This document shows, in pieces, positions 5,781 through 61,018 of a stretch of 64,000 bases of DNA. Origin of the DNA: Ruditapes philippinarum (taxonomy: Eukaryota); the NCBI RefSeq assembly GCF_026571515.1, contig NW_026861528.1, forward strand, positions 1 through 64,000, given 5' to 3'. A model generated the notes under the pieces. That model worked only from the letters and a program-made list of their open reading frames with translations, searched no databases and was not told the origin of the DNA. Every line of letters begins with the position of its first letter. The first letter of the stretch is position 1. Position numbers and translations under genes: made by a program.

Positions 5781-6417
5781 TTGCCTTGAGTATAGAGATG
5801 TTGTGATGCGCACTTCTCACCTTGATCTGAATTTTATAGGTTCAGGTTTGAATTAAGACGAGCACACGTTAGCATGACATGTATTATATATTTTTTTCCG
5901 TTATCAACTGCTGGTCAACCATGATTAGAACATTTAATCTTTCGAAATATATGGTCGACTCAGCTCAACCATACAATGACAAAATGAGCATAATGGCACT
6001 TTAACATTTGCAGTTATTGATTCTCCTTTTTCCAAGTAACTTTTTTTAAAGAGATCAAACTAAGATGTCAAACATAAACGTGTATCTATACGTATTTCTA
6101 TTTAAGTGGGCTTTATTATATGTGGAAAATATAGACAACATGATATATATTCGATTTTTATATCTTTACGAAATTTATTTAATCATCTTATGAATGATTT
6201 GAGTTTTCTAGAAAATACGGGGTCATTATCAACTACTAAGCATAACATGCCCCAAAATGAAATAAAATATAATTATTATAATTTATTGAACATTTGTGTA
6301 AAAGTTTTTTGCGTAACAGTTCAAAGTTCAAAAGCATTTTTGTTTCAATTTAAGATCCGATTTAGTAGGCATTAGCTGTCGTAGATTTTATTCGTTCGTC
6401 TGTGGTGAATTGTATGC

Positions 6418-9400
6418 TCAAGCTGGCACTGAAATACATACATATAACAGTTTAATCCTATAATATATAATCAATTTATTCCTCTATCTAAATCTCACCA
6501 ACTTTAATGACAGATGGTGCATTCTTTAATCACATGCTTTCGTTTCATATGACTCCATCGACATATGAACTGTACCAAGTAAATTACACAAATGTATATG
6601 AAATATAAGCAAAATATAGTTTGAGTTGAAAATTCGTTAAATTGGTTTTACTTTTTCTTGAGTTTGCCAATTATTTTATGCAATGTTTCAATAGTTCACA
6701 TTCAGTTACAGGTACACTTCGTTAAGAGATGTACTTGGTGCGAAGTAACATTCCCACACAACTTCACCCCCCCCCCCAAACACACACCAGTCGAATGTAA
6801 CTTTTAATCTCAATCAAAGTTTAAACATCATTAATTTTAAACTATTGGAAGGGAAGGTATTACTTCCCATTTAACTTTCGGGCCATTTTACCTTACAATT
6901 TCCTTAACTGACCTTATTACTAAACAATGCACTTTGAGTCAAACTAGAGTTTCTATCTATAAAGACAAACATACTCTGTCTTATATTTAGATTAAACAAG
7001 TTGATTAATGATCATTAATTTTGTTATACATTGATGAACCTCAATATTTTGGAAAGAATATTATTTATTTAAGTAAAAGGGACTATTTAATATGCAATTA
7101 AATTGAACTATAAAATAAATGAATTTTTTATCCTGACGCACAGAAAAAATTGCTAGTGAAGAATATAATGAAGGACAAGAACTTGTTCCAGAGTAGAAAC
7201 ATCATGCAAGTTTCCATTTATATATGGCATAAATTACACTGTAAATAAAAAAGATGTAATATAATATTGTAACATATCATGTTTTATAATACATGTATAT
7301 GATATTAAATAACTGCTTGAAACAATTGAATAAAATGAATATATTATATATAGAAGTATTTTAATTTACGGACAAAAATATAACAAAACGTACAACAAGC
7401 TTTCTCGGTACATGCAAGAACGCCATCAATGCAGGTACATGTATTACACTCTATCTGTATGCTCTCTCCGTGTTGAATGTTTACTTTAACTTTATCACTC
7501 CCTTCACCAACTTCATATTTACAACTTTTACCGCCTGAAAAATCAACAGCTTATTTATTCATGCATGCAACTTTATTATGGTTAGATATACATTTGACAG
7601 AGTACCTATTTTTCACTTTTGTTTTTTTGCCCCTTATAACACAATGCTGGGACGTTGCTTTAGCAGATCGTTTTAAATTGCCGGATATATTTAAGAAATG
7701 ATATCAGTTTTAACGGTGTTTATCGGCTATTTAACACCGGTTTGAAGTTTTTCAAAATAACCGATAAACACCGCTCAGACCTATATTTTCGATTCTAACA
7801 TGATAAAATAATGAAGATCATTTAATGTCATTTTTTAAGCGGAGATTACTTCCGGTGCCGATTTTCGTTTTGCGCTGTTTGATTTCGCACCCTACTGTTG
7901 CTAAGTTATAGAAATTATTAAACAAAAGAAATAATAAGAAAAAAAGTTATTTTATCAAGTTTTCACGTCTCATGCTGGATTGTTTGATTAATCATTCTTG
8001 TATGTTTGAAATGACGTCATTGTAGCGCCTTTATGAATGAGATGTATAATGAGGATTACGTCATTACGCTGCATTCGGTTTGGCGCCGTTTTGTAACTGA
8101 TATTGATCAAATCTGTGGTGTTAGTGTATAAGAGATACTATTTCAGTATTGTATGAAAAGAAAACATTATAACTTAAATATAAGAACTGAAAATATCAAT
8201 TTAATGTTGTTGTTGTTTTTTTTCATTATTAAATTGCTTTATAAAGCTTTGTAAACTACATTATCTAGGAAGAAAACATAACAGCCGATTATACAAATAG
8301 ACCCTAACAAGTGTTTATTGGCAAGTAAACACCGTTTTTTTTTTCTTTGTCTGTAGTGACACAATCACGAAGAGTGTTAGAATTATCATTGAACCTACAC
8401 AAATATAGATAATACAGTATGTTGTTTATTACATATACAAAGTAACAGCTGCATCTAAATATCTTATTACTTACATTTTAATTGCAATTTATGTGACGTG
8501 ATCTATGGTAAAACAATTGATTTTGGAATCATAAAACAAATAACACTCACATATACTACACTACTGTTAGAAAATAACGTATACATTACATATATTATTA
8601 TCAAAGTAATGTCAAAGGTCGAAACAAATCCAAACGAAACGATTGTGAACGGGGGACGGAGAGTCTCGTTACAATATCATAGGACCATTTGGTAAATTAC
8701 ACAAATGGTATCGAACCAAGAATCTCCGGACTATTGGTAACTTAAACAAATGGTCCTGTGATATCGAACGGAGACATTCCAGACATTTGGTAACTTAAAC
8801 AAATGGTCCTGTGATATCGAACCGAGACTCTGGACATTTGGTTATATCGAACCGACATTCTCCGGACTTTTGGCAACTTAAACAAATGGTCCTGTGATAT
8901 CGAACCGACATTCTCCGGACTTTTGGTAACTTAAACAAATGGCCCTGTGATATCGAACCGACATTCTCCGGACTTTTGGTAACTTAAACAAATGGTCCTG
9001 TGATATTGAACCGAGACATTCCGGACATTTGGTAACTTAATCAAATGGTCCTGTGATATCGAACCGACATTCTCCATACTTTTGGCAACTTAAACAAATG
9101 GTCCTGTGATATTGAACCGAGACATTCCAGACATTTGGTAACTTTATCAAATGGTCCTGTGCTATCGAACCGACATTCTCCATACTTTTGGCAACTTAAA
9201 CAAATGGTCCTGTGATATTGAAACGAGACATTCCGGACATTTGGTAACTTAAACAAATGGTCCTGTGATATCGAACCGAGACATTCCGGACATCTGGTTA
9301 CCTAAATGCATGGTCCTGTGATATCGAACCGAGACATTCCGGACATTTGGTAACTTTAACAAATGGTCCTGTGTTATTGAACCGAGTCTCTCTGGACATA

Positions 9401-11686
9401 TGGTAAACTAAACAAATGGTCCTGTGATATCGAACCGAGACATTCGGGACATATGGCAACTTAAACAAATGGTCCTTCGATATCGCACCGTCACACTCCG
9501 GACATTTGGTAAATTACATAAATCGTTCTGTGATATCGAACCGAGACATTTCGGACATTTAGTAACTTAAACAAATTGTCCTGTGATATCGAACCGAGAC
9601 ATTCCAGACATTTGGTACTTTAAACCTATGGTCCTGTGATCTCGTTTTTTCCGAACATATGGTAAATTACACAAATGGTCCTGTGATATCGAACCGAGAC
9701 ATTCGGGACATATGGCAACTTAAACAAATGGTCCTTCGATATCGCACCGTCACACTCCGGACATTTGGTAAATTACATAAATCGTTCTGTGATATCGAAC
9801 CGAGACATTTCGGACATTTAGTAACTTAAACAAATTGTCCTGTGATATCGAACCGAGACATTCCAGACATTTGGTACTTTAAACCTATGGTCCTGTGATC
9901 TCGTTTTTTCCGAACATATGGTAAATTACACAAATGGTCCTGTGATATCTAACCGAAAATCTCCGTCCCCGTTTACACAAAATATTTGTTCATTGAATTT
10001 TTCTGACCATGTTACATTCCGTTTTAAAGCAATGTGATGTAATGGTCAGTGATGAACATAGTCTAAAGGGAAATATTAACTTTGATAGTTTGTAGCAGCC
10101 ACATAATGTGCATAGACCAATAAGATCCTGAGATCGGGATACATATTTTTTTTAAAAAAGTAGTTGTTTGCTTTTAACTTCAAGGCCAGGATTCACGCTT
10201 TAATATTTCTCGAATAAAACATTTTATAGACATATCAGCTCACCTGGACCTTAACGTATTTTCATCTAAATGGTAGTGCATACAGGTGTAACATTTTCCG
10301 AAAATAAACAGCAATTGCTATATGTTTGTTACGCCTGAATATCTTTATAAAACCGCCACATTTGTCAACAATTTAGATGAAAGTATCGTTTATTTAATGC
10401 TATAATGTGATCAGTTGTTTAGTATGTAAATAACAAGATTTATTATATACTAGTACTTACAAATGAAATATTGAGAAATATTGATAAAATAAAATGCGTA
10501 TTTTCATTTTCCGTATTTTCACTGTAAAAATTTATTTTTCACTGCAGTGCAACATATTTTCCGTATTTTCACTTATGTCTTGCCGGACTACTTTCTTTTA
10601 ATTTCTGCCAGTACACAAAATTTAAGGTAAAGTCTTTCAAATTTTAATGTCAAAAAAGAGAAAAATGTATATAATAAACAGAAAATTCAAGTTTTTTTTC
10701 TATAAATACATGATTTATTTTCATCTTGTGGCATGAAAATTACCATATTTCACTTGTGGCTACCGCCACTCATGAAATATTTATTTTCATACCACTCGAT
10801 GAAAATAAATCATGTATTTATAGAAAAAACTTGAATTTTCTGTTTATTATATACATTTTTCTCTTTTTTGACATTAAAATTTGAATAATAATAATAATAA
10901 TAAAAATAATAATAATTGTATCATACATAATTTTACTCTCTAAAACTTAAGTGATTTTATAACTCCGCTACATCACTGACCTGATGTTGCAGTTTTTCAT
11001 CAATACATTTATTGTGCGTCTATACAACGAGTTGAACAGCTTATAATATATATTATTTTAATAATACTACATATAGTGAAAAGGTCACGACAAGGTTTTG
11101 AATAGCAGTGACATTCATACACTCAATGATTTAATTTAAAACATGGTATAAGTTACTTAGTTAAATTGAAATTTTGTCGTCAATCATTTCCTCATAACCA
11201 TTATTTGTAATAACAAATACAAATACAAAACACACACGAGTTTATGAATGAATAAATTAATATATAAATTAATTAATTAATTAATGTTTGTCTGTTTGTA
11301 ATTAATTACAAACAGACAAACAAACATTAAACAAATAAATAAATGAATAAAAAAATTGTCGTCAAACATTTCCCCATAACCATTATTTGTAATAACAAAT
11401 AAATAAAACAGGTACGATATTATAAATGAATATAAAAAACAGTCAAACAAACAACATAAAACAAACAAAAACAACAACAACAACAGTCAATAAATGGAAA
11501 AAATTCGGAATGATAATAACAACACATACCTCTGCACTTCGGACAACATTGTCCCTCAGCTGGTATCTCTTCGCAACCAGGTGGATAATAACATTTTATC
11601 ACGGCACAGTCCTTTGCTCGGGCTCCTTTCACAATCATTAAATTAGAAAGGAGAACGAATGCAAGTATTATTTTGACCGAATCCAT
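6418..11686 (-). CDS. Gene A: secreted 12-Cys protein, 102 aa (signal peptide + half-VWC-like + pacifastin-like); exons 11686-11530, 7534-7394, 6428-6418
   Basis: GT-AG phase-1 introns give an uninterrupted frame: MDSVKIILAFVLLSNLMIVKGARAKDCAVIKCYYPPGCEEIPAEGQCCPKCR/GGKSCKYEVGEGSDKVKVNIQHGESIQIECNTCTCIDGVLACTEKAC/LPA*. Same exon layout as paralog B. Confidence 0.85.
7691..8390 (+). mobile_element. Non-autonomous hairpin-ended element (Crypton-like), copy 1
   Basis: Same ends (ttaagaaat...ttagaattatcatt) and body as 14840-15973. Family assignment is inference. Confidence 0.55.
8648..9973. repeat. 53-bp tandem array (~24 units) bounded by inverted repeats (MITE-like)
   Basis: Unit aacttaaacaaatggtcctgtgatatcgaaccgagacattccggacatttggt. 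Ends are AACGGGGGACGGAGA and TCTCCGTCCCCGTT. Confidence 0.85.
10435..10885 (+). mobile_element. Hairpin-ended element (Crypton-like) with a ~250-bp palindrome
   Basis: Homologous to 15185-15571. Inverted arms span 10636-10885. Confidence 0.6.
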
Positions 11687-12509
11687 TTCTAAAAACAAAT
11701 TTCAAAAAAGATAAATATACTCTGATGGGGCTTTACATAATTACGTACGAAATGATGAAGTTGTAAACAAATCAAAGACAATGTTTTATATTTTATAACA
11801 TCTTTTCTTTGTTTTTCATAATCATCAACTATCTTATTTAACAACAAGTACTTTAGATTATAAAACAATTATTTTATTCTCTTGTCCTTTGTCACAATAT
11901 GATTCTAGAAGATTGCTTCTTAAAACTTAAAGAATTCTTGTATAAGTCACATCATAAAATTTATGTGAGCAACTGTCTATTAGAACATAATTTTGTCTTT
12001 ATTATATAATTTTTCATGCTTTTAATTAATTTTGATCTATCTTACAATTATAATATGATATTCGGGTTTTTATCTGAACTTTTCTTATAGTTTATTTCGA
12101 AATTATCTTACATTATTCTGATTACTTATCACTATATTTCCCGAATATGTCTCTTAATATCAAACACACAACAATTATGTAAATATTTACCTAACAACTT
12201 TCAAGATATATCCGTCTTATTATATAGCAAAACAGCGTAAAATAAAGAAAGTATATTTATTTAATGTTGATCAACAGGTATGACGAGGCTATATGCGTTA
12301 TCTAAAATGTTTATGTTTTTTGTTACAACATCTGTTTATTTATTTTATATGATTACTGCCATGAGTCACGTATAATATTTTACATAAGCATCTATCTTAT
12401 TGCCTTTATACATATGCACTCCTAAAAAGCAAGCAAATTGTTAAAGTGTATCTTAAAAAGATATTATCTAATTGCACTGTTTGTTCTAATGTTCTAGTCT
12501 AATGTTTTT

Positions 12510-14060
12510 ATACTTTATAAATGATATCGTCGAAAATTTAAACACGGACATCGAAGGAATATTTACTCTAGACGAGCTAAAACTGTTCATTTAACTATTT
12601 GCCGATGATTCGGTACTTTTTGCAAACACTCAAAATGCACTTCAAGATTTACTAAACAAACTAGAAGCATATTGTGATACTTGGGGCCTAAAAATAAACA
12701 CCGACAAAACAAAAGTAATGATTTTCGAAAGGGGCCGTCATACACAACATAATTTTATTTTATGTGAACAACAATTAGATGTTGTTAAATCCTTCAAATA
12801 CTTAGGAACACACCTATTTAAAAATGGTTCTTGGTTCAGAACGCAAAGCAGGATAGCACAGTACGCATCATATGCTTTACACAACTTGTTCATTATTTTC
12901 AACCAAATTGAATTAACCAATAAAGATAAATGTAATCTGTTCGATAGCCTAGTTAGATCAGTCCTAAATTATAATGCACCAATATGGGGAAATCACGAAT
13001 CAAAAGCTATTGAGTTGATACATTGTAAATTTTTACGTAAGGTGCTTGGTGTAAAAAAATCTACAAATCTAGAAGGGCTGTATGGTGAGGTTGGAAGAGT
13101 ACCTATGAAAATATATAGAAAACTATTGATGATTAAATACTGGATTAAAATATTGACATCTTCCAATGTATTAATAAGAAAGGTTTATGATATGTTGTCA
13201 AATGATGCTAATCAAAATATTACATATAACAACATGAATTGGGCTTATCAGATAAAACGTATTCTAGAGGAAATAGGATTAGCTGACATATGGATTAATC
13301 AAACTAATATAGTCATCCCTTATTATTTCATCAAACAGAGAATCCTTGATATTTATAAACAATCTTGGTACACTAATATCAACAACTCTAACAGATTATC
13401 TTCATACTGTCTATTTAAACATACTTTTTATCTTGAAAAATATCTAGAATGTATAGATGAAAGAAAATATCAAATAGCATTATCTAAATTTAGATTGTCT
13501 TCTCATCAACTAGCTATCGAAACTGGAAGATACACAAATGTCGATCGACAACTTCGAATTTGCCAAGAATGTAATATGCGCATGATTGAAAATGAGTATC
13601 ATTTTTTATTAGTATGCCCGAAATATAGAGAACTAAGAACCAAATATTTTAAACCATATTATTGTAGATGGCCATCAATCCAAAAGTTCATAACCCTTCT
13701 TTCATGTGAATTTTCAAAAAGTATTACCAATGTTGCTAAATTCATATATTCTGCCTTTCAACTAAGAAATACCAATAACAATGTTTAAATACACTGGCGA
13801 TTTCTTTAGTATTTTATACTATCATACTATATAATGATCAAAGAAACGCAGTTTTTAATAGTTAATTTTTATTTACTGATCTAGTCACAGTTGCAGAAAA
13901 TTTGTATTGTTTTTTTTGAAAATTGACTGAATGTACATGTTATCAATATACTTATCCTTTTTGAATTGATCATGTTCTTCTGTTAAAAATTTCATGTCTG
14001 TACTTCTTGCATTGTAAATGGCTATGTATGTATGTAAACACATATTATGCTAATAAACTA
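12510..14060 (+). mobile_element. 5'-truncated non-LTR retrotransposon (RTE-X-like): RT C-terminal part, CCHC domain and 3' UTR
   Basis: LFADD at ~12595, in frame with ORF 12718-13788. C-terminal LSKFRLSSHQLAIETGRY...CQEC...HFLLVC motif; AATAAA at ~14052. Confidence 0.85.
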
Positions 14061-14839
14061 TATATGTTATGTTGTAGTTTTTTATTTTTAACACGTCAGA
14101 GCACGCCTGGTAAACGATGTTTAGAGCTACCTCTTTTAGAGGTATACGGTTAATCGCTCTATCGCTACTTCCTAGCTAGTTCATTTTGCTTAATAATCAG
14201 GTGTCAAGTGTTTTCATTTTTTAAATATATTTTGTAAACTCTTCACCAAATATCGAAATTCGGAGAATACAATGGCAGGTAGATTTGATTATGATTTCAA
14301 AAAAAAACATCGTTGTTATAATTGTGTTTGAAATGTAGTTCTGGAGGCGTTTCCCAGTTAAGAAATTTTGAAACGGACCCTTTCATCATGAAATAGATTA
14401 TTTTCTCTTTAATTTTCATCTAAACAGCGATTCATATCAAAAACAAAAACGTTTCAAGTAGATATAAGGTCTATAAATGAAATAAGATTGAAATTTGATC
14501 AAAACATTAGTTAATACAGAAAATATAGGATATTTGTTCTGGGAGACAGCTCTGTCGTGGAGCAAGTCGTCATGTCGCTAAGGAGACAGCTCTATGGTTA
14601 CGTACAAAATACATTGTATGTAATTGTTTGTGTATATTCTATTCATAACAATTATCACGGCACAAAAATTTAACAAAAACAATAACAAATGTAATTTTAT
14701 ATATGTATATCATCGCGTAATGAAACATTACATTTACAGCGTTTGAATTGTTATCGACTCATTTTTTTCACTGCACACAGCTTTTACTTTTTATATGTAA
14801 TAAACAGCATACAGTTCTAAGATATATGTGTAGATTCAA

Positions 14840-15973
14840 TTAAGAAATAATATCGGTCTGATCGGTGTTTATCGGCTATTAAACACCGGTTTGGAGTGTT
14901 GATGGGTAGGAATTGACCACCTGGGTGGTTCATTTGCTCGCATCAAAACGACCACTCAGACCGATATTATTCCGATTCTAACAAGATAAAATCAGGAAAA
15001 TCACTTTTTTTTCAAGCGGAGATTACTTCCGGTGCCGATTTTCGTGAAACGCTGTTCGATTTCGCACCCTACTGTTGCTAAGATATAGAAATTATGAAAC
15101 AAGCGAAATAATAAGAAAAAAAAGTTATTTTATAAAGTTTTCAACAATAAAAACTTACTTATAAGTCTAGATTTTTTTATATACTTATAAATGAAATATT
15201 GAGAAATATTGATGGAATAAAATGCGTATTTTCATTTTCCGTATTTTCACTGTAAAAATTTATTTTTCACTGCAGTGAAACATATTTTCCGTATTTTCAC
15301 TGGTGTCTTGCCGGACTACTTTCTTTTAAATTCTGCCAGTACACAAAATTTAAGGGAAAGTCTTTCAAATTTTAATGTCAAAAAAGAGAAAAGTGTATCT
15401 AATAAACAGAAAATTCAAGTTTTTTCTATAAATACATGATTTATTTTAATATTGTGGCAAGAAAATTACCATATTTCACTCGTGGCTACCGCCACTCATG
15501 AAATATTTATTTTCATACCACTCTATGAAAATAAATCATGTATTTATAGAAAAAACTTGAATATCCTCTATGTATTGTGTTTACAGTGCTCAATTTATCA
15601 TTCTTGTATGTTTGAAATGACGTCAGCGTTTATGAATGAGTTGTATACTCACGATGACGTCATTACACTGCTTACGGATTGGCGCCGTTTTGTCAAAATA
15701 TATATTAACTGATATGGATCAAATCTGTGGCGTAAGTGTATGTAAGTTATTATTTCGTTATTGTATGAAAAGAGAACAATACAAGAACTGAAATTATCAA
15801 TAAAATGTTTTTTATTTTTGCTTTAAAAAGGCTTTGTGAACTATATAATCGAGAAAGAAAACATAACAGCCACATATACAAGTAGTCCCTAACCAGTGTT
15901 TATTGTCAGTTTAACCAGTATTTTCTTCTTTGTTTATAGTGACAAAATCACGGGGAGCGTTAGAATTATCATT
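14840..15973 (+). mobile_element. Hairpin-ended element copy 2, carrying a nested second element (~15185-15571)
   Basis: Terminal inverted pair aataatatcggtctga / tcagaccgatattatt. Matches 7691-8390 apart from the insert. Confidence 0.6.
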
Positions 15974-18900
15974 ATAAATATATATAGACAATGAAGAAAG
16001 AAAAGGTGTTTTAAAAGGGAAAAAGGAGAATAACTTTTTGACTAGCTTGAAACAATGTTAGATATTAGTACTTTAGCTAAAATGGAAACTCCCTAAGCAT
16101 TTTAAATAGGGAACCAAGTCTTCTCAGAAAGCTTGAAAAACAAGTACATCAAAAGCTCAATAAATATTTCTTGTTACAACTGTCATATTCATATTTCTAT
16201 TATCCCATATGAACGGTTACTATGTGACGCTTCAAATTTTCAGGGATGCTAAATTGTTAAGAGCAATGTATACATTATGTGTTCCTGTTAGATAATTGTG
16301 TGTGTACATTTGAAATGTGAAATCTGTAAACAGTGTTCACATTTGTACAGCTTACTACTCATCCTGGAGTTGGAATAAAAGTAAGCTCACTTCGTGAATG
16401 GTGTAACAGGAATAACTGCTAATATAAAGGAAATATTGTCAAGTAGTTTCTTTCTTTCTTCATAATGAAACCCGTGGTATCAACATCCTATATATCTTTT
16501 ACATCGGAATCTTTTGACATTTTTTTGCAGATATCATTTTTTGTTCTTTTGAAACCATAAAGCTATCGTCTTGGCGACATGACTACCTCCTTCACGACAA
16601 AGCTATCTCGCAGAATAAATATCCTACATTTTCTTTAATAAATAGCTTTTGTGGTGATTTAAATTTAATTTTGCTTCTAGACCTTATATCTATTTGAAAA
16701 GTATTTGTTTTTAATCTGAATCGCTGTTTAGCTGAAAATGGGAGGAAAATAATCTGTTTCATGATGAAACAGTCCATTGAAACGCTAAATTCGCAACATT
16801 TTACTTAAAATCTTCTTACATGCCGGAATCAATTTTAAACAATGATAATTTTACACATTTCAAAGCATTCCCACTATTGACGAATAACAGTTGTTTCTTA
16901 AACCAAGTGAATAGTTTAAACAAAATGCATTTATGTATTTGGAGACTTACATAATTATATCCCTTCCAGTAATGTATACGAACAGATTCAATCAAAAAGA
17001 GAATCTTCGGGTTCATTTTTCCTTCTTAGTGTTGGTAATAGTTTTGTTGTAAAATGCTGAAGTAATGAATAATTCAACAATTTTTTTTTTGAGATTTGAT
17101 ATAAAATATATAGTTGATCTTTGAAATTATGGTTAATGCTGGAGGTATGTCAATAATTTTAGTAAACATATTTTAACGCCAAAAACTGTATTATGGAAAA
17201 GGATGCATACGCGGTTTGATTGAACATACTTATGGATGGTACAGGAGAGCGCATGCTAACACCCACACCCCATTACACCAGCTGAAGTAGAATTAAAAAA
17301 TGGTGAAATGTTACGACGGTTATCAGGGACACGTCTTTGCCATTTATGAACAGAGGCATTTGGCCTTAAGTAAAAGAATGCGTGTGTCCTTTACGGGAAG
17401 TTCAAGTGTAAAGAATTAATTAAAAATACCACAAAAACAACATTTATGTCATGATGAGCGCTTTTCAAGGATTGACAATGTAACATCTTTGATTTAATGT
17501 ACACGGTGACTTTTTACGGCCTTAACACTGCACAAACAAGACAGGCACAGTTTGATTTAGCCTATTCTTGAAAAAGGTAAAATTGAAAAATCTTGATAGA
17601 GATTCAACAGACTATGCCTTATACAAAATATCTATGCTCTGGGCCTGGTGGGTCTGTAGAAGATTTGTTTTCTTATAATTAAATTTGGTTGTCATGGCAA
17701 AAACAAATTATACATAGAATCATTCTTTGAACAACTTTGGAAGCACTATACCAAAGAAACAATCATGCCAAGTTTGGTTGACATGGGTATTTTTCAGGAC
17801 CGTCCATGAACAAGCTCAAATAAAACCGAAACCTGTAACATTTTCAATTTTGCCGTGTATGATGTTCTTTATGGATTATTTTCTTTATTTTATTTTTCTA
17901 TTCCATTAAAAGCCCAAACAAAAATATTTTGCCTGCTTTTAATTCTTTCGTTTTGTATTCCTTTTTATTGATTCCCCTTTTCTTTTTTTCCATTTTCAGT
18001 GTTTTCATTTTCATGCAATAAGGTAGACTGTCTGTCCAAATGCTACACATTTTTTTCACTTTTTTCAAACAAAATTATTAAACGTTTCGAGAAATGGTGG
18101 ATATCACTCTTTAGTTTTATAATATACCGTCTATTGAATTTATACACAAAAGCAAACGCTTAGATATTAGGAAAATATTTTATTAGAATAAATGCGCTGC
18201 AATCTGCGGTCCCATTCCCGTGGTGAGATCTTTGTTACATGTTTAAACCTACGTTAATCACAAATTACAAATGTCATTTTCACGGTTGATTATATCACAC
18301 ACGTGTTACTCTTTCGATCTGTGACATATACAACTCAAAATGACATTTAGATATTTGTAATATTCACACATGTGTTGTAAAAAACATTTATTTTACGTGA
18401 GTCATCCCCCGCCATAAAATGTAATTCTTTAAATTTGAAGTTCACAAAAATGATACCACTGTAAAAAGCTGCTTTTATGTATTTTTTTCTTTTGTGTTAT
18501 TAGAATAAGGTCTAGAACAAGTAATGTAAGTTTTTTCGTAAACAGGTTGCAGAGAGAGAGAGCAAATATATTGGTGAAAATTATACATTATACAAATGTT
18601 GTGCAAAATGTTTTGAAAGAAAAATGATAACGGTATGAACTTAAAACTAATTAACAGTCTGTTTCAAGTACAAAATATGGTAAACAAGAACCTTGAGCGT
18701 ATTTATTTCACTCTTTATTGAGATGAAGTAAAAGAATTTAATAAAGACACATAGTCAAGTAAAAATACATTAAATTCAAATTAAATTCATCATTATGCCC
18801 TAGAAATGATTTTATTTCTTTTTCTAAAAAGCTTTTTTTTATTTTTTGTGTACTTTATAGTTTCCAAAAAAGTACTGAATTACCAATTATTATAATATTG

Positions 18901-19356
18901 TTTTGACAATTAGTACAGTTATATTGATTTAGTATTTTGTATGGAAGTCAAAATACTACTTTTTAAACCTTTTGTCATTTTTTGTGACAAATAATTTCAC
19001 ATTTAGCACTATGTCAAACATGCCCTAAGACCAATATTTAAACAATTTAAAAAACTCAAGTAAACAATTTGTCCGTTTCTGAGGCAAAATTTCCCTTTAA
19101 AGTAGCATTATGCCTATCCAAGGATAAACAGTGAGTGAACAATTTCAATAATTCCTTAAAAAAAAATAATTTACTTCGCGCGAATGATAAATGACTCATG
19201 TGTCCCAAATAATATCCATAAATATTCCTTGGATGTTGATGTTGATGTCCTGAACAATTTCCAATATCGAATGTTGATAAATCACTATTATAATAGCCTA
19301 TTATGTAAAATACATGTATATGAATGTAGTCAATGCAGCCCAACTTAACAATAAAA

Positions 19357-20521
19357 CAAGGGAAAATTTTTTGCCAAATACGTCCGTCACAAAATCAATT
19401 GACAAAGATGTGAGCATTTTAGACATATATAGGATATATGCTCCGGACACTATCCGGACAATATCTGGGTATTTTATCATCTCCAGTGACACCTTGTATA
19501 TATTAACTTTAATAAAATGGTTTACAACCGTAGTCATGATAATGACCATTTTTGTTTCAATCCCTTAAATGATATATGAATAAATACCGGTAGTCTAAAT
19601 ACACATTTTCATATTTTTATCTGAAATTTGACCTCTATACTTGGTCTTAACCCTATCCGCAGTGACCTAAATTTGCACGTGGCACTCCGCCTCATAATGA
19701 TGATTATTTTTGACAACATGTATTTAAATCCCTTCATACATGTAGAAATTTTGCTCCGGACAAGAACTTTTCAATGGCCTCTCAGTGTAACCTTGCCTTT
19801 GACCCAGAGACCTGGTTTATACTCGCGACACATTTCTCATAGTGGTGAACATTTTCTATGAAGTTTCATTGAATTTCATGGGTGAAGGAGATATGCTCCG
19901 GACAAAATCTCTATATTTTAACATTGACCTTGCTTATAATAACCTCAATTACATGTTTTACGTCCGAAGTAATGATAATAACCATTTGTGTTTTCAAACC
20001 CTCCATAATGATGACTTAATGGTCCAATACACATTTCATATTTTTATTTAAACGTTGATTCCTATGTGTGACCTTAATCTTGGTTGAAGGGAGCTGAATT
20101 TTGTACGCCTTATAATGGTGAACATTTGTGCGAAGCTATATTGAAATCACACACCATACATGTAGAAGATTTGCTCGGACAAAATCTTAATATTTTATCA
20201 TTTTTAATAAATTTGACCTTGCATATACATGTATAAACCTAAATTACATGTTTCACAACCGTAAACATAAAGATGACCATTTGTGTTTTTATCTCTCCAT
20301 AAATGATAACTAAACTAGAACATTGAACTGTATGTGAGACCTTGACCTTGGCCGTAGGGACCTAGGGATGAAGAAGATTTACACCGGCTCTTTGAAGTTT
20401 TATTAACAATCCCTCAATGTGTGTAGGAGCTATGCTCCGGACACAATTGGTCGCCGCCCGCCCTTCCGTTCGCAAGGGGCGTTCCTGTATTACATACCTT
20501 TTTTCGAATGGGCGTATAAAA
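19357..20521. mobile_element. HINE/Helentron-like non-autonomous repeat with internal subrepeats (paralogs ~26796-27700 and ~62233-62950)
   Basis: aacaaggg start, repeated tgaccttg/gctccggac units, GCCC microrepeat and gggcgtataaa end. Confidence 0.5.
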
Positions 20522-21027
20522 TGAGCAAAATGTCACTATAACATCTACAGGCATGCAAGCACTCGCTGATACACCATTAGGGACTCTTATTCACTTATGG
20601 CTGTTTATTAGCTCTACATGTTTTCTTCTTTTTTACAATTTTACTGTGCAGCACTATACTTCACTGACTTCTGGAAATAGTGTTTACAAAAGTTATATAA
20701 CCTTATCTTCCACTGAGCCGGTATTTGAACAAAAAACTCTGATGATTAAGAGATAACTAAGAGCAATGAAACTATGTTCATTATGGTCGAGTATTTATTA
20801 AAGATACTTTATGTTCACAGTCATGCTATATTTTCAAGTCCTTGCATATGTTTAAGAAGATGCATGAAATGATGTTGATGTTATTAAAGGGATCTGAAAG
20901 AAGTTAAACGTAATACGTGATGCTTGACAAATTTCATATAAACTAGATAACCAGATGTTGTGAGATTATGTGTATCGTAGAAGCTTCGTCAACCGTCAAT
21001 ATGTATACCTTGTCATTTAACGTGCTG

Positions 21028-21130
21028 TTGCTATATTAAATTGTAAGACTGATTTATTCTTAAAACTGAAAGGTCAAAATTTACAGGTTGATTCAGTGTT
21101 TGATCATATTCGGAAAATATAGGGGTAAGT
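21028..21130 (+). promoter_or_regulatory. Putative TATA-like promoter and non-coding exon 1 of gene B (donor gtaagt ~21125)
   Basis: Block conserved upstream of family copies (~12120-12240 minus, ~32420-32495, ~33400-33510, ~56160-56260, ~63185-63275). Confidence 0.45.
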
Positions 21131-21390
21131 AATTAAAAAACTGTAAGAAAAGTTAGGAATAAAAAAGTTCGGATAAAAATTCCTACACGAGATACCAAGG
21201 TATTTATTATTATTTATGTTAAAAAATATAAAATTACAAGTAAAACAATTGTTTTGTCAACAGTCGGACAATACTTGTTAACTTATTTTGTAATTTAAAG
21301 GACCTCATTGATAATAAGGAATAGATGGTATGAAATACAAAGAAATGCTTATATTTTAGAAATTTGTTTTCAGACAAAGGTGGAATAGAA

Positions 21391-24300
21391 ATGGATTCGG
21401 TCAAAATTGCGCTTGCATTTGTTTTGCTTTCTTATACAATGGTTGTCAATGGGACCCCTGTGAATAAGTGCGCATTAATTTTATGCTATTTACCAATCGA
21501 TTGTGACAAATCGCCACCAGCTAACGGACAATGCTGTCCAAAATGCAAAGAAGGCAAAGGTATGAACAATGAGAAGTTGTTATATCATTCCGTAATTTTT
21601 TTTGATAAAGATTCATAAGATTCATAAATACGTTAAAAATGTATACAAAGTTATGTTTTCAGAACAGTATACCAAATTTAGTTTTATCTAGTAAATGGGC
21701 GACAAATTGAAGTTAATTGAATGATTAGAGTAAACCATATTAAATATAATCAAACTTCGCTTTTTCTGTATGCAAAATAAAAACATTTGATAATACTCCA
21801 AGGAAACGGAATGAAATGTTATAAAAGATGTTATAATGCAATAGTTCGTACATAGAAAGACGGAAAAAAGGTTTAAACTGTCCGACAAATGTGAAGCTAG
21901 AGAGAACGTGCTATCGGGATTATAATGTAAGCACCCTTTTTCTGAATGAATATTCTTTTAAAAATCATATTCTGTAAAAGAGCAATAAACATGATTGTAC
22001 TGTATAAAGAATTACAAGTCTAGCTTATACTAGTACAATATTATCGCAATTTTTAGACCAGCATTATTTCCCATAAAATTGTTAGAAATAAGACTGACTT
22101 ACTATTGTCTTCAAGAAATGAAATTTCAACACAGACGTATAATTAAACATTGCTTTCCATGAATGCCTTTTGAATTGCCTACGAAATGTTATTGTAATGA
22201 AAACATGTCTGCCATGACCCTCAGAAGACAAAATTAAATAACTGTCCATTTCGAACGTCAATTTTTCTTTCTGTTCCAAAACAAGCCTTCATTTTCAGTT
22301 TGAATTTCACTCATATGTAAGACTTTATTTTGCCACGACCTTTTGCATTAAATGTAGTGTTATTAAAAAAATACATTTTATTAGCTGTCTAACATGCTGT
22401 ATACATGTATGATTAATGTATGGATTAAAGACTGCGACATCAGGTAAATAATTATCTTCTGAAGCAGTGTCACATTTATGTCAAAAAGGTAATGTTAAAA
22501 AGGTATGTTAAAGGCGTATGCCACATTAACATGTAGACATATAAGCAGATATGCTAGAGGGGTATGCCACATTAACATGTAGACATATAAGCAGATATGC
22601 TAGAGGGGTATGCCACATTAACATGTAGACATATAAGCAGATGAAAACTTCGCTTTGAAATTATATAAACTTTGCACGATTTTTGAGTATTTTAACAGAA
22701 TCATTTTAAACAGAAAGATTGGGGAACGGCATGGGGGGGGGCAGGGCGATGGAGTACCGGGATCATTATCGGATCGTCTGACCTTGAAGGACATTTTGCT
22801 TATTCCAATATATCCTTGAAATATTTTTTGTAATACTGGTAAAGATGATTGAAATGTTGATTCTAATTTTGATAAAAATTTATTGAAATCTATCAAATTC
22901 TTTATGAATATGCCTAACTTCAATAAAAGAATGAATAAACTATTTATGGGAAGATGTGTTTCCTATAACAGGTCAAGTAAATTTGTGCTGTTCTTAAAAA
23001 AAAACACTTCAGTTTTCTAAATGACACTATATATTCATATTGTGACCACCAATATAACAAATCTGTTTATTTTATATTTACTAAGGAATTGTGTAGAAAT
23101 TATCAATATTCTTTTTATCAAATTTGAGCAAAGTATATCTTTAAAGAAAATGAGTAGAATATATAGTTGAACAAGAAATCATTGGTTCGTTTATGAAGTA
23201 TTATTTTCTGACATTTCTTTCAAGTACTGCTAGCTATACAGACAACTGTAAAATAGCACAAATCTGGAGTCAAGTGATTTGTATTATATGACGAGGGATA
23301 TAAACGAGTTTACTCGTTAGTATTCCTAACTCCTGTTCATACCTACTAGACTTAATTGATGACAAATGTTTTTTTTTGTTTTTTGTTTTTTTTTCAGGCC
23401 TGACGAATATAATTATGTAGATATCATTAGTTATTTTTGCCAAAAGTTTAGGTTTCAGATACGTTCATTGAATGCCGCCCTGCCTCGTTGATCTTTGCTT
23501 TCATATTTTACAAACATTTTAACTAAAAGTTATTTTCGTAACAGGTTACACCCGAATTTAACAACCATTACATTTCATATCAGATAGAAATACAACATTA
23601 TCGAGAGAATTCATTTGTAAATAAAAATATTTTATCCGAGACACTTCCCAATTATGTAATCACTACTTGATATGAAATGTGTCATGTCTTTTGCCATTGA
23701 ATGTATTCCATGGGGAAGAAACTGTTATACGAGATTAGGTGCTTGTGATAACTGTCATGGACTTTTGTATATACTACAAAAACACTCATCAAAATGATAA
23801 TATTCATCTTTAAAAAGTGAGTTTTAGGTGCTTAATTAAGCTAAAATGATTACGTTTGCCTTACATCTTGTATTTTATGTCAAAAACTAATTCATACGCT
23901 ATTTTTCATGGCCTCTTGCTTAAAATTTTGGTTGTTTTGAGTCAATTTCACTCAAAACAATAGGAGAGAGATTATGCAGTCATTAAAGCTAGGGACTCAA
24001 CTCAACTGAGACTTTTTATTTTACATAAAAGAATTATAACTATTTTTTCGGAATTTGTTTGCAATTTGATGTAGGTCAACAGCATTAATTTGTGTGTGCG
24101 ATCATTTACTGATGTAATAAAGACATTGTGACGTATAATGATAACTTAGATAACAATATCTAAAAGATGTAGCATCTAAAACGATAAATCTTCAAAACAA
24201 ACACAAGCACCCAAGTACTCACAAACCGTCCATGCGGGTGAAAAAGAGACAAAATACTCTGCCAAATGTATGTTCAATATCGATGAGTTGCAAACATTCA

Positions 24301-25373
24301 CAAAGAAGCTGTGATTTTTCAGGACAGTCTTGTGACTATGAAGTTGGTGAAGGTAGTGATAAAATAAAAGTAAACATTCCGGACGCGAAGAGCAAAAAGA
24401 TAGACTGTAATACGTGTACATGCAGTGACGGCGTGCTTGCATGTACCAAGATTGCATGTGGTAATTTGTTTTATATTTGTCCATGAAATCAATTTCTTTT
24501 TAAAATATTATACTTTTTATCATTTGAAATACATGTAGTCATTTACATTATGTTTCATAACATTTTCAATATTATTATGTATGCAATGTAATTTATGTTT
24601 ATAATTAAGCGCAGGTTAAATTTCAAATCCTTACAATGCAAAAAAATGGAAGGGATAACGTTTCAACTTATAATTCGTCAAATTGAATATGTTATAATTG
24701 TATTATGTTACTCGAAATAATCTAAAAGTTAATTGAGTGAAATAATTTTCTAGGTTAGACTTAAACTGGAAACTTATCTAGATATATCAAAAACTATCTG
24801 ATACTTAAAAAGTTAACAAACACAAAAGTTTTATAGATAAACAGATACTTATCTATTATTTAACTGGTAAGTGTTGGCAGTTCTGGGCACTTTTTAGTGT
24901 TTTTGGAAGTTAGATACTTTTTCGTTATCTAGCAGAAAAAAATATCTAGTTAGTCTGATAAATATCTGTTATCTTGTTAACACGAAAACTATCTAGTTAG
25001 TCAGATAGTTAACGCGATAATTGTGTGGTTAACATCGACAGACATATGCCACCATTAGTACCTTATTTTGTTGACGTCAAACAAATTGAAATAGTCTTGA
25101 TGTGAAAACTGTCCAACGTTGGTAGAAAACTGCCAAATGTAAAGATTACAACTTCAATGATCTACCGAAATGTTTTTCAACTTAAAATATACACTGTTGT
25201 TATCTTTTTGTGCAGTTGGCCTTATAAAGTTTACATGTCGATGGGACCATATTCAATCAACAAACATAATGAAAACATGCAACAAAATTACAAACTTAAA
25301 CATCTCTTGCTTGCACAGGATTTCTATATGTTAACTAATATGCTTTATTTATGTATTTACAGTGGACGCTTGA
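21391..25373 (+). CDS. Gene B: secreted 12-Cys protein, 105 aa; exons 21391-21559, 24323-24460, 25363-25373
   Basis: Intact spliced frame: MDSVKIALAFVLLSYTMVVNGTPVNKCALILCYLPIDCDKSPPANGQCCPKCKEGK/GQSCDYEVGEGSDKIKVNIPDAKSKKIDCNTCTCSDGVLACTKIAC/VDA*. AATAAA plus a GT-rich tract at ~25618-25670. Confidence 0.85.
22516..22642. repeat. 46-bp tandem repeat, ~2.7 perfect copies
   Basis: gtatgccacattaacatgtagacatataagcagat at 22516, 22562 and 22608. Confidence 0.9.
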
Positions 25374-25689
25374 AAATAAATCTCACCATAGATGCTGACC
25401 ACAAACGAAAGGATATGAACTTCTATTGCTAATATCTGTTAAATCAAACTTTAAAATGAAACTTTTACCTAATTACGGTTTGTTTTATTTACATTTACAG
25501 TACATATTTTTAATATTTGACCATACCCCGTCATGTACATTCCAGAACTGTCATAGGCGAAAAAAGAATATTAATTGGCATATTGATAATATAATTGTAA
25601 AAAAAGCTTAATGATGGAATAAAAATAAAAAAGATATAAAGTGTCTATATCATGTTGTTTTGATGATTTTTTATTCTTTCACATACAGT

Positions 25690-39275: not shown

Positions 39276-39574
39276 TATCTAATGTATTTAGTAATTCAAA
39301 ACGATCGACCATTTTTTTGTTATAAGTGGCAAATATTACAAAGTGTAAAATACGAACTCTGTAAAATGTAAATCTAACCATAATAAAGTTGCATGCATGA
39401 ATAAATAAGTGGTTGATTTTTGCAGGCGGTTAATTTTGTAAATATGAAATTGGTAATGGGAGTGATAAAGTTAAAGTAAACATTCTACACGGAGAGAGCA
39501 AACAAATTGATACATGTAATACATGTTTATCACATAATACGCGGCGCAGGAGTGTAATAAAGCCATTTAATAAT

Positions 39575-59700: not shown

Positions 59701-61018
59701 TACGATCATTTTACTCATATAATTAACACATTGTGACGCATAATGATAACGTTTACAATATCTAAAACATGTAGCATCTTAAACGATTAATCTTCAAAAC
59801 ACACAAACGCACTCACGCGCGCACACACACATACGCACACACACACGCGCACAACGGGTGAAAAAGAGGCAAATACTCTGCAAAATGTACGTTAGGTATC
59901 GATAAGATGCAAACATCCACAAAGAAGCTGTTGGTTCTGCAGGTAAATCTTGTGACTTTGAAGTTGGTGATAGTATTGTGGTGAACATTCCGGACGGGGA
60001 GAGCAAAAAAGATAGACTGTAATACGTGTATGTGCAGTGACGGCGTGCTTGCGTGTACTAAGCTGGCTTGTGGTAATTTGTTTTATATTTGTCCATGAAA
60101 TTAATTTCTTTTTAAAATATTATACTTTTAACCATTGAAATACATGTAGTAAATTTACATTATCTTTCATAACATTTTCGATATCATTATATATACAAGG
60201 TAATTTATGTTTAAAAATTAAGCGCACGTTAAATTTCAAATCCTTATAATGCAAAAATGGTAAATTGGGGGGGGGGAGGCTAAATAACGCTTCAACTCAT
60301 AATACGTCAAGTCAAATTGATTTTGTTATAATTGTATTAACTTACTCGAAATAATCTAAAACTTGATTGAGTGAAATGATTTTTCGATTAGACTTATAAA
60401 CTGGAATTTAATCTTGATATAGCGATAATTAACTGATATTTAAAAAGTAAAAAACACAAACGTTTTATGGATAAACAGATAATTATTAGTTATGTAATTG
60501 GTAAGTGTTGGTAGTTTTGGGCACACTTTTGAGTGTTTTTGAAAGTTAGACAATTATTCTTTATCTAACAGAAAAAAAAACATATTTAGTAAGTCTGATA
60601 AATATCTGTTTTTCAACGCGAAAAATAAATACATAGTAAGTCAGATACTTAACGCGATAATTGTGTGATTAACGTTGACAGAAATATGCCACTTTAAGAA
60701 CCTTATTAAGTTGACGTCCAACAAATTGAAATTGTCTTTATGATGTGAAAACGGTCTAACGCTGGCAGAAAACTGCCAAATGCAAAGATTACAACTTTAA
60801 TGATATACTGGAAAGTTTTTTTCAATCTAAAATATACACTGTTGTTATCTATTTGTGCAGCTGGCCATAAAAAGTTTACAAGTCGATGGGATCATATTCA
60901 ATCAACAAACATAATGAATACATGCAACACAAATCCAAACTAAAACATCTCTTGCATGCACAGGATTTGTATATGTTAACCAATTTGCTTTATTTATGTA
61001 TTTACAGTGGAAGCTTGA
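56730..61018 (+). pseudogene. Gene C: paralog of B with small indels; exons 56730-56901, 59943-60072, 61008-61018, plus a dead duplicate exon ~58590-58723
   Basis: Four 1-2 nt indels in the first coding exon and +1 A in the run at 60005-60010. The corrected exon reads GKSCDFEVGDSIVVNIPDGESKKIDCNTCMCSDGVLACTKLAC/VEA*. Confidence 0.75.
58400..58501. repeat. (CA)/(CACG) microsatellite
   Basis: Directly visible; shorter version at ~59798-59852. Confidence 0.9.

What the first reader, a model, noticed from the sequence alone, without database searches (positions are those of the whole stretch)
6418..25373. Secreted 12-Cys proteins with VWC halves in swapped order and a pacifastin-like inhibitor loop
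Seen: one exon encodes signal peptide + C-x4-C-x5-C-x8/9-CC-P-x-C; the next encodes C-x24-C-N-T-C-T-C-x2-G-x3-C-T-x3-C. Known: a VWC domain runs C..CxxCxC..C..C then C..CCPxC, and pacifastin (MEROPS I19, characterised mainly in arthropods) is C-x9-12-CNxCxC-x2-3-G-x3-6-CT-x3-C. Inference: a VWC C-half precedes a VWC N-half/pacifastin-like module, each on its own exon bounded by phase-1 introns. This may be an undescribed two-module protease-inhibitor/defence family linking the VWC and pacifastin folds. It is invisible in the ORF track because it is spliced.
Basis: partly seen in the sequence, partly recalled or inferred. Interest (0 to 1): 0.85.

Follow-up and report, generated by a model that had tools for sequence, protein, structure and literature searches.

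The report
Small clam pacifastin-like inhibitor gene family
The window (Manila clam, Ruditapes philippinarum) holds two intact and several decayed copies of a clam-restricted family of about 100-residue secreted proteins that join a half-VWC-like cysteine module to a pacifastin-type domain. They are most likely serine-protease inhibitors, but the gene models are already in RefSeq and mollusc pacifastin-like domains were catalogued in 2026, so this is a modest extension and not a new class.

Summary
Two head-to-head three-exon genes (6418-11686 on the minus strand, 21391-25373 on the plus strand) encode 102- and 105-residue secreted 12-Cys proteins. All introns are GT-AG and phase 1. An AATAAA follows each stop codon. 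The exon pieces match RefSeq models of Ruditapes philippinarum.

Module 2 scores above Pfam's Pacifastin_I cut-off (35-40 bits against 27.9). Its only sequence matches among solved structures are locust pacifastin inhibitors (E 5e-6). Module 1 has the VWC C5-C10 cysteine framework. Its homologous exon in a giant PLD/WAP gene of the same genome aligns to VWC profile positions 30-57.

That giant gene starts with the same two exons, split at the same phase-1 Gly codon. The small genes therefore look like duplicates of its 5' end, not a permuted VWC.

About twelve loci exist in this genome. Paralogues give dN/dS of 0.15-0.8. Full-length kin were found only in Mercenaria.

Inhibition is inferred, with P1 = Lys or Glu. 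Disulfide pairing and expression could not be tested.

Mollusc pacifastin-like domains were already described (PMC13388995), so novelty is limited to the unrecognised N-terminal module and the architecture. Another first-stage note (s1-804324) recorded the loop difference on this window.

The parts
11530..11686 (-). Gene 1, first coding exon: start codon, signal-like hydrophobic stretch, module 1 (C-x4-C-x5-C-x8-CCPxC); ends in phase 1
   Evidence: residues 1-52 of RefSeq P0118
7394..7534 (-). Gene 1, second coding exon: module 2, a pacifastin-like domain with a long N-terminal hairpin (C-x24-C); phase 1 at both ends
   Evidence: (Pacifastin_I 35.3 bits, cut-off 27.9)
7395..7412 (-). Gene 1 predicted reactive loop CTEKAC (P1 Glu, P1' Lys)
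   Evidence: P1 position as defined in PMC13388995 and by alignment to locust inhibitors
6418..6428 (-). Gene 1 terminal coding exon (completes Leu, then Pro-Ala, TGA)
   Evidence: P0118 ends LPA
6387..6392 (-). AATAAA polyadenylation signal of gene 1
21391..21559 (+). Gene 2, first coding exon: signal-like start plus module 1 (C-x4-C-x5-C-x9-CCPxC); ends in phase 1
   Evidence: residues 1-56 of RefSeq P0001
24323..24460 (+). Gene 2, second coding exon: pacifastin-like domain
   Evidence: (Pacifastin_I 35.5 bits)
24442..24459 (+). Gene 2 predicted reactive loop CTKIAC (P1 Lys, P1' Ile)
25363..25373 (+). Gene 2 terminal coding exon (completes Val, then Asp-Ala, TGA)
25375..25380 (+). AATAAA polyadenylation signal of gene 2
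33968..34000 (+). Remnant of a first exon (11 residues identical to gene 1, then stops)
39428..39532 (+). Decayed module-2 exon (stop before the first Cys, one-residue insertion before CNTC, truncated)
   Evidence: same lesions in two other copies of the genome
56730..56909 (+). Decayed first exon (in-frame TGA and a frameshift)
58574..58723 (+). Module-2-like exon that has lost the last cysteine (ends CTKMV...)
59942..60074 (+). Module-2-like exon broken by a frameshift (loop CTKLAC kept)

Best explanation
The window holds part of a tandemly duplicated, birth-and-death gene cluster found in venerid clams. Each intact gene encodes a small secreted protein built from two independently disulfide-bonded 6-Cys modules.

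Module 1 is an N-terminal cap with the cysteine framework of the C-terminal half of a VWC domain (C5 to C10). Module 2 is a pacifastin-like domain (PLD) of the long-hairpin type.

The family most likely arose by duplication of the first two coding exons of a giant multi-headed PLD/WAP inhibitor gene, followed by gain of a tiny terminal exon.

The inferred mechanism is canonical (standard-mechanism) serine-protease inhibition. The loop C5-T-P1-P1'-x-C6 would sit in the protease active site, and P1 would set the target class: Lys in gene 2 (trypsin-like enzymes), Glu in gene 1 (Glu-preferring or unknown enzymes). Paralogues differ mainly at P1/P1' within an otherwise invariant core.

Shown: gene structure, module identities, family distribution, purifying selection, and a shared exon plan with the giant gene. 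Inferred: secretion, disulfide pairing, inhibition, targets, and any defence role.
For: - Gene models: the exon peptides equal RefSeq P0118 and P0001.
- Module 2: Pacifastin_I scores 35-40 bits against a cut-off of 27.9, while VWC scores only 16-21 bits.
- The family profile hits only locust pacifastin inhibitors among PDB sequences (2xtt E 5e-6, 1kj0, 2vu8, 1gl0). The CNTCxC, G and ACT positions are aligned.
- The AF2 model (pLDDT 74; module 2 at 82-91) shows a hairpin plus a three-stranded sheet. It superposes on pacifastin inhibitors at 1.3-2.1 A over 29-30 residues.
- Within the core from CNTC to the last Cys, the paralogues vary most at P1/P1' (EK, KI, EI, KL; Mercenaria QK).
- dN/dS is 0.15-0.8.
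- The giant gene on C9921 has a signal-plus-module-1 exon ending in a phase-1 split Gly codon, then a phase-1 PLD exon, then WAP and PLD exons.
- First exons of the small genes match that exon by BLASTP at E 3e-6 and 3e-5.
- The Mercenaria 1628-aa homologue carries 19 PLD and 16 WAP hits, both inhibitor-type domains.
- PMC13388995 reports K and E as typical mollusc P1 residues.
Against: - No biochemical or expression evidence could be obtained.
- Pacifastin_I cross-reacts with true VWC domains of the same genome (29.4 bits for one), so passing its cut-off does not prove an inhibitor.
- The C1-C2 spacing of 24 lies outside both the conventional range (9-12) and the published long-hairpin range (13-20).
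- P1 = Glu is unusual for a canonical inhibitor.
- All structural matches are weak (Foldseek E above 0.2, VIA Z at most 3.6).
- The disulfide pattern could not be read, because model coordinates are not exposed.
- The N-terminal hairpin varies as much as the loop, so reactive-site hypervariability is not unique.
Confidence: 0.6

Rival explanations
1. These are non-inhibitory VWC-type proteins. The PLD-like module would act like VWC subdomain 1 or a fibronectin type I module, binding a growth factor (BMP-type), an extracellular matrix component or a shell-matrix component. The family would then be a secreted modulator or structural matrix component.
For: The same residues also hit VWC (1-36), the VWF E-like module, FnI_RECK and CFC profiles. 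True VWC domains of this clam cross-hit Pacifastin_I. The nearest language-model clusters are VWC2L-like proteins, at a score of 0.84, which is a lead only. Structural neighbours include CCN3 and collagen 2A VWC, FnI modules and VWF/mucin E modules. A Lottia shell-matrix protein carries 'VWC/pacifastin' domains. RefSeq names these genes kielin/chordin-like.
Against: Pacifastin_I outscores VWC by 15-20 bits in every member. PDB sequence hits are pacifastin inhibitors only. The CT-P1-P1'-xC loop is kept. The closest large relative combines PLDs with WAP inhibitor domains. The RefSeq names are automatic and mutually inconsistent (jagged-1-like, peptidase C1-like).
Confidence: 0.25
2. The protein is a circularly permuted single VWC domain. 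Module 1 (subdomain 2) folds back onto module 2 (subdomain 1), and the two are cross-linked by the equivalents of the C2-C8 and C6-C9 disulfides. The 12-Cys protein would then be one fold and not two modules.
For: Module 1 aligns to VWC profile 29/30-55/57 and module 2 to 6-38. AF2 gives a pTM of 0.63 for the whole chain, which suggests a defined mutual arrangement. The linker between modules is only 4-7 residues.
Against: Each module has six cysteines and can satisfy itself. In the Mercenaria giant protein, module-1-like units stand alone between WAP domains with no PLD after them. PLDs of the same genome occur as stand-alone exons without module 1. The two modules overlap in VWC register (both contain C5-C6 equivalents), so this is not a simple permutation.
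Confidence: 0.1
3. The proteins are cysteine-rich effector peptides with another activity (antimicrobial, toxin-like or signalling), and the pacifastin scaffold only gives stability.
For: The proteins are small and secreted, the family is lineage-restricted and tandemly expanded, and it carries many pseudogenes.
Against: There is no similarity to any antimicrobial or toxin family in Pfam. The mature part is not strongly cationic or amphipathic by inspection.
Confidence: 0.05

Closest known systems
Pacifastin family inhibitors (MEROPS I19, Pfam PF05375), e.g. locust SGPI-1/SGTI, PMP-C, PMP-D2
   Same: The C2-C6 part of the framework (CNxCxC-x2-G-x3-CT-x3-C) matches. The Pfam score is above cut-off. 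About 47-50% identity over 30 residues to 2vu8_I and 2xtt_A. The loop CT-P1-P1'-xC is kept.
   Different: The C1-C2 loop has 24 residues instead of 9-12. There is an extra N-terminal 6-Cys module and a single PLD per precursor, with no dibasic processing sites. P1 is Lys or Glu. The host is a mollusc. Activity is untested.
'Ancestral' long-hairpin pacifastin-like domains of Mollusca (Rodriguez-Aguilar et al. 2026, PMC13388995)
   Same: [quoted passage not shown]
   Different: That paper gives the hairpin as 13-20 residues (here 24). It does not describe the half-VWC N-terminal module or this small two-module family. Ruditapes and Mercenaria accessions were not found in its two held supplementary files.
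VWC / chordin-like cysteine-rich repeat (Pfam PF00093)
   Same: Module 2 aligns to profile 6-38 (subdomain 1: hairpin plus three-stranded sheet). Module 1 aligns to profile 29/30-57 (subdomain 2, with CCPxC).
   Different: The order is reversed, the C5-C6 equivalents are duplicated, the whole-protein score is below cut-off (16-21 bits against 27.6), and the modules lie on separate exons.
Giant PLD/WAP protein of venerid clams (Mercenaria XP_053408337 'kielin/chordin-like', 1628 aa; Ruditapes gene on contig C9921)
   Same: It opens with the same signal-plus-module-1 exon and PLD exon, with the intron at the same phase-1 Gly codon.
   Different: It continues with about 19 PLD and 16 WAP domains and further module-1-like units at the C-terminus. 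Its PLDs have C1-x16-C2. The small genes stop after one PLD.
VWF/mucin E modules and fibronectin type I modules
   Same: Weak structural matches of model residues ~53-105 (Z 2.5-3.3, rmsd 2.4-3.4 A over 40-44 residues). Pfam VWF E-like and FnI_RECK hits fall on the same residues.
   Different: Scores are below significance and there is no functional parallel. These modules are not protease inhibitors.

Membership tests
Pacifastin (PF05375 / MEROPS I19) | Profile score at or above Pfam's gathering cut-off (27.9 bits) | tested here: met
   35.3-40.3 bits in P0001, P0002, P0004, P0005 and P0118; 31.2 in Mercenaria P0010. Caveat: one true clam VWC also reaches 29.4 bits.
Pacifastin (PF05375 / MEROPS I19) | Six-Cys motif C-x(9-12)-C-N-x-C-x-C-x(2-3)-G-x(3-6)-C-T-x3-C | tested here: not met
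   The C2-C6 part fits exactly. The C1-C2 spacing is 24 (21 and 20 in relatives), which is outside 9-12 and beyond the 13-20 of the published long-hairpin class.
Pacifastin (PF05375 / MEROPS I19) | Reactive loop C5-T-P1-P1'-x-C6 | tested here: met
   CTEKAC and CTKIAC, aligned to the CTRMGC and CTRKGC loops of locust inhibitors.
Pacifastin (PF05375 / MEROPS I19) | Disulfides C1-C4, C2-C6, C3-C5 | not testable with these tools
   An AF2 model was obtained, but coordinates are not exposed. Needs mass-spectrometric mapping or a structure.
Pacifastin (PF05375 / MEROPS I19) | Three-stranded antiparallel sheet fold | tested here: inconclusive
   The model has strands 80-83, 86-91 and 94-98. Rmsd is 1.3-2.1 A over 29-30 residues to 7sgq, 2vu8 and 2xtt, but Foldseek E is 0.8-1.8.
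Pacifastin (PF05375 / MEROPS I19) | Tight-binding inhibition of serine proteases | not testable with these tools
   Bench assay needed.
VWC (PF00093) | Ten cysteines C1..C10 in one contiguous domain, subdomain 1 before subdomain 2 | tested here: not met
   The order is a C5-C10-like module followed by a C1-C6-like module.
VWC (PF00093) | Profile score at or above 27.6 bits | tested here: not met
   15.9-21.2 bits, covering only profile 6-37.
VWC C-terminal half (subdomain 2) as the identity of module 1 | Alignment of module 1 to the C-terminal part of the VWC profile, above chance | tested here: inconclusive
   The window's own module 1 has no Pfam hit. The homologous exon of the giant gene hits VWC 30-57 at 18.8 bits, E 0.002, below cut-off. 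The clam-VWC HMM aligns module 1 to 29-55 at 4-9.5 bits in the context of the whole proteins and at 10.9-15.6 bits for the isolated peptides. The peptide scores are reached by 0-2 of 1000 full shuffles and by 6-60 of 1000 Cys-fixed shuffles.
SVWC (single VWC of arthropods) | Match to the Pfam SVWC profile | tested here: not met
   No SVWC hit at E up to 10 for the exon peptides or the full proteins.

The most novel reading that the evidence does not exclude
In bivalves the two subdomains of the VWC domain exist as separate exon-encoded modules bounded by phase-1 introns. A stand-alone subdomain-1 module is what databases call a pacifastin-like domain, and a stand-alone subdomain-2 module is the 6-Cys cap seen here. 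Under this reading the pacifastin inhibitor family (I19) and VWC share a common origin. In pacifastin the C2-C6 bond would replace the two bonds that tie subdomain 1 to the CC pair of subdomain 2. These clam genes would then be living intermediates documenting how an inhibitor scaffold was carved out of, or fused into, a matrix/BMP-binding domain.
Probability: 0.3. Interest if true: 0.6.

Novelty: new variant of a known kind. Interest (0 to 1): 0.35.

Why it matters
If the proteins inhibit serine proteases, the Manila clam (a major aquaculture species and a host of protease-secreting parasites and vibrios) has an expanding set of single-headed inhibitors whose specificity is tuned at P1. These would be candidates for defence, digestion control or shell-matrix protection.

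For protein evolution, the loci show a pacifastin-like domain and a half-VWC module side by side on symmetric phase-1 exons. They also show measurable cross-reaction between the Pacifastin_I and VWC profiles in one genome. This makes the suspected VWC-pacifastin relationship directly testable.

For annotation, the RefSeq names (kielin/chordin-like, jagged-1-like, peptidase C1-like F26E4.3) are misleading.

Tried and rejected
Searches were made exon by exon by reference, or with an uninterrupted reading frame and a region limit. Full-length work used the database proteins that the search returned.
- The first AF2 run on an 11-row alignment was useless (pLDDT 37). The second run, with 20 single-PLD exons added, gave pLDDT 74.
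- Foldseek, VIA re-ranking and the VIA wide search gave only weak matches. Nothing was found for module 1.
- The ESM Atlas gave only sub-0.9 leads (VWC2L-like).
- Pfam found nothing for the window's module 1 alone.
- The search for Mercenaria P0010 relatives found only itself.
- Literature searches for expression of these genes, or for pacifastin in bivalves, found nothing specific. The supplements of PMC13388995 do not list these accessions.
- Rejected: gene-model artefact or pseudogene for the two main genes, because of intact frames, GT-AG introns, a polyA signal and purifying selection.
- Rejected: tandem VWC protein cut by the window, because the terminal exon and AATAAA follow the PLD exon.
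Full report
**What is in the window**

The sequence is AT-rich animal DNA. A protein search with the second coding exon of the plus-strand gene returned RefSeq proteins of Ruditapes philippinarum, the Manila clam. The window is bases 1-64000 of contig C10015 of that assembly.

Gene 1 lies on the minus strand. Its coding exons are 11686-11530, 7534-7394 and 6428-6418. Gene 2 lies on the plus strand, with exons 21391-21559, 24323-24460 and 25363-25373. The two genes are head to head.

All four introns begin GT and end AG, and all are phase 1. Both genes end in TGA. AATAAA follows 26 nt after the stop in gene 1 and 2 nt after it in gene 2.

Every search of the window's own coding sequence was made exon by exon by reference. 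One search used an uninterrupted reading frame that contains exon 2, with the search limited to the exon. The search tool returned database proteins P0001 (105 aa) and P0118 (102 aa). These contain the in-frame exon peptides as exact substrings at residues 1-56 and 58-102 (P0001) and 1-52 and 54-99 (P0118).

**Module 2**

Pfam's Pacifastin_I profile scores 35.3-40.3 bits against a cut-off of 27.9 in all Ruditapes members, and 31.2 bits in the Mercenaria relative. The VWF E-like, FnI_RECK, CFC and VWC profiles hit the same residues more weakly. VWC scores 16-21 bits, below its cut-off of 27.6, and covers only profile positions 6-37.

A profile of the family, searched against all PDB sequences, finds only locust pacifastin inhibitors: 2xtt at E 5e-6, then 1kj0, 2vu8, 1wo9 and 1gl0. 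The CNTCxC, Gly and ACT-P1-P1'-xC positions are in register.

The first AlphaFold run failed (pLDDT 37). I then added 20 single-domain PLD exons from the same genome, by reference, to the alignment. The second model reached pLDDT 74 and pTM 0.63, with 82-91 over module 2. It shows a beta-hairpin (60-64, 71-75) followed by a three-stranded sheet (80-83, 86-91, 94-98).

That topology is the one described for VWC subdomain 1 (PMC10326224). It also fits the long-hairpin 'ancestral' pacifastin-like domains (PMC13388995).

Structure searches gave only weak matches:
- CCN3 and collagen 2A VWC domains.
- VWF and mucin E modules.
- Fibronectin type I modules.
- Pacifastin inhibitors, at rmsd 1.3-2.1 A over 29-30 residues.

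All had Foldseek E above 0.2 and VIA Z of at most 3.6.

**Module 1**

The window's module 1 alone has no Pfam hit. Three results tie it to the C-terminal half of VWC.

- I built an HMM from 13 complete single-exon VWC domains of this genome. It aligns module 1 to positions 29-55 (C5 to C10) and module 2 to positions 6-38.
- The isolated module-1 peptide scores are reached by 0-2 of 1000 full shuffles and by 6-60 of 1000 shuffles that keep the cysteines in place. The resemblance is therefore mostly, but not only, the cysteine framework.
- The homologous exon of a giant gene (next section) hits Pfam VWC at profile 30-57 with 18.8 bits and E 0.002. VWC is the only family hit.

Both modules contain equivalents of C5 and C6, and each has six cysteines.

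**Relatives and origin**

A profile search of 1.84 billion representative proteins found full-length relatives only in Ruditapes and in Mercenaria mercenaria (P0010, 101 aa).

The pair 'signal, module 1, PLD' also opens other proteins:
- A 1628-aa Mercenaria protein with 19 PLD and 16 WAP hits and two further module-1-like units between and after its last WAP domains (P0006).
- Two Mactra antiquata proteins with two or three PLDs. One of them ends in a complete VWC (P0061, P0044).
- An unnamed eukaryote-like protein family from ENA (P0034).
- In a looser form (CC-x4-C), a 141-aa protein from a Myxococcales metagenome-assembled genome (P0101).

In Ruditapes the counterpart of the giant gene lies on contig C9921. 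Its first coding exon encodes a signal peptide plus module 1 and ends one base into a Gly codon. The next exon is a PLD, also phase 1. WAP and PLD exons follow. The small genes are split at the same Gly codon.

Their first exons match the giant gene's first exon by BLASTP at E 3e-6 and 3e-5. A module-1 profile finds no other exon type in the genome.

The simplest history is duplication of the 5' two exons of the giant inhibitor gene plus a short new terminal exon. Stand-alone module-1 units and stand-alone PLD exons argue for two self-contained modules and against a permuted single VWC fold.

**Family dynamics**

About twelve loci exist in the genome. Most lie along contig C10015 up to about 110 kb. 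Others lie on C4887, C13544 and C15858.

Six or seven look intact. The window also holds decayed copies at 33968-34000, 39428-39532, 56730-56909, 58574-58723 and 59942-60074.

Pairwise dN/dS among intact paralogues is 0.15-0.8 for the signal part, module 1 and module 2, apart from a single closely related pair at 1.09 in exon 2. This indicates coding constraint.

In the 20-residue core from CNTC to the last Cys, P1/P1' are among the few variable positions (EK, KI, EI, KL; QK in Mercenaria). The N-terminal hairpin varies as well. The first-stage note s1-804324 on the same window records the same loop differences.

**Function**

The best-supported mechanism is canonical serine-protease inhibition through the CT-P1-P1'-xC loop, with Lys or Glu at P1. 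I put it at about 0.6. This rests on sequence similarity to characterised locust inhibitors, on the inhibitor-rich giant relative, and on the published mollusc P1 spectrum (K, E).

It is weakened by a control. Pacifastin_I also scores true VWC domains of this clam (29.4, 20.1 and 18.6 bits), and VWC scores PLDs at positions 1-36. In molluscs the two profiles therefore describe a continuum, and passing the cut-off does not prove inhibition.

The main rival is a VWC- or FnI-like binding or matrix role, at about 0.25.

**Novelty**

Breugelmans et al. 2009 found no pacifastins in Mollusca (PMC2689174).

Rodriguez-Aguilar et al. 2026 (PMC13388995) reported 109 mollusc proteins with such domains. 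They described the long-hairpin class, the K/E P1 signature, and co-occurrence with VWC and WAP.

A Lottia shell protein with 'VWC/pacifastin' domains was listed in 2014 (PMC4094399).

Three things are not described in what I could read:
- The half-VWC N-terminal cap.
- The small two-module venerid family and its derivation from the giant gene.
- An explicit VWC-pacifastin relationship.

I rate the finding a new variant of a known kind, with interest 0.35.

Noticed in passing
window 39428-39532; also G000:C10015:70190-70333 and G000:C15858:187919-188023: Three module-2 pseudo-exons share the same stop before the first Cys and the same one-residue insertion before CNTC. The copy was therefore already dead when it was duplicated. 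Matching first-exon-like pieces lie at C10015:66515 and C15858:184057.
   Followed up: partly
window 56730-60074 and G000:C10015:73810-77169: A three-piece unit (first exon, a module-2 exon that has lost its last Cys, and a second module-2 exon) occurs twice. The window copy is broken by a stop and frameshifts. The downstream twin looks intact apart from the Cys-less middle exon. This may be a two-PLD variant or a pseudo-exon.
   Followed up: partly
G000:C9921:136000-194500 (loci L024-L030, L040-L062): A giant minus-strand gene has one exon per domain: signal plus module 1, then alternating PLD and WAP exons. P1 residues include L, R, E, K, M and N. A sub-array with CTND/CTNN loops scores higher for VWC than for Pacifastin_I. 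It is the counterpart of Mercenaria XP_053408337, which is misnamed kielin/chordin-like.
   Followed up: partly
L033, L051, L060 (G000:C12060, C8738, C14336): Complete VWC domains of the clam cross-hit Pfam Pacifastin_I (29.4, 18.6 and 20.1 bits). The first is above the family cut-off, so automatic pacifastin counts in molluscs may include ordinary VWC domains. L051 and L060 encode a signal peptide plus a single VWC2L-like VWC on one exon.
   Followed up: partly
P0101 (MCB9639003.1, Myxococcales MAG): A 141-aa bacterial MAG protein has a signal peptide, a module-1-like C-x4-C-x4-C-x14-CC-x4-C unit and two PLDs. This is the same layout as the clam proteins. Whether it reflects homology, transfer or contamination was not examined.
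   Followed up: no
window 44772-45554 (+), 47765-49318 (-): ORFs with a DEAD/DEAH helicase fragment and a DUF6589 domain (split over two ORFs) lie inside the cluster. This is consistent with the transposon noted by another first-stage reader.
   Followed up: partly
window 7535-11529: The first intron of gene 1 is about 4 kb. The corresponding intron of its closest paralogue (C10015:82968-84106) is about 1.1 kb, so gene 1 has gained roughly 3 kb of inserted sequence. A 356-aa ORF with no Pfam hit lies just upstream of gene 1, at 12718-13785.
   Followed up: no
window 11690-11700 and 21370-21375: An AG acceptor-like site lies a few bases upstream of each start codon, and RefSeq lists isoforms of a paralogue with different N-terminal extensions (P0005, P0119). 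The 'first' coding exon is therefore probably preceded by a non-coding 5' exon.
   Followed up: no
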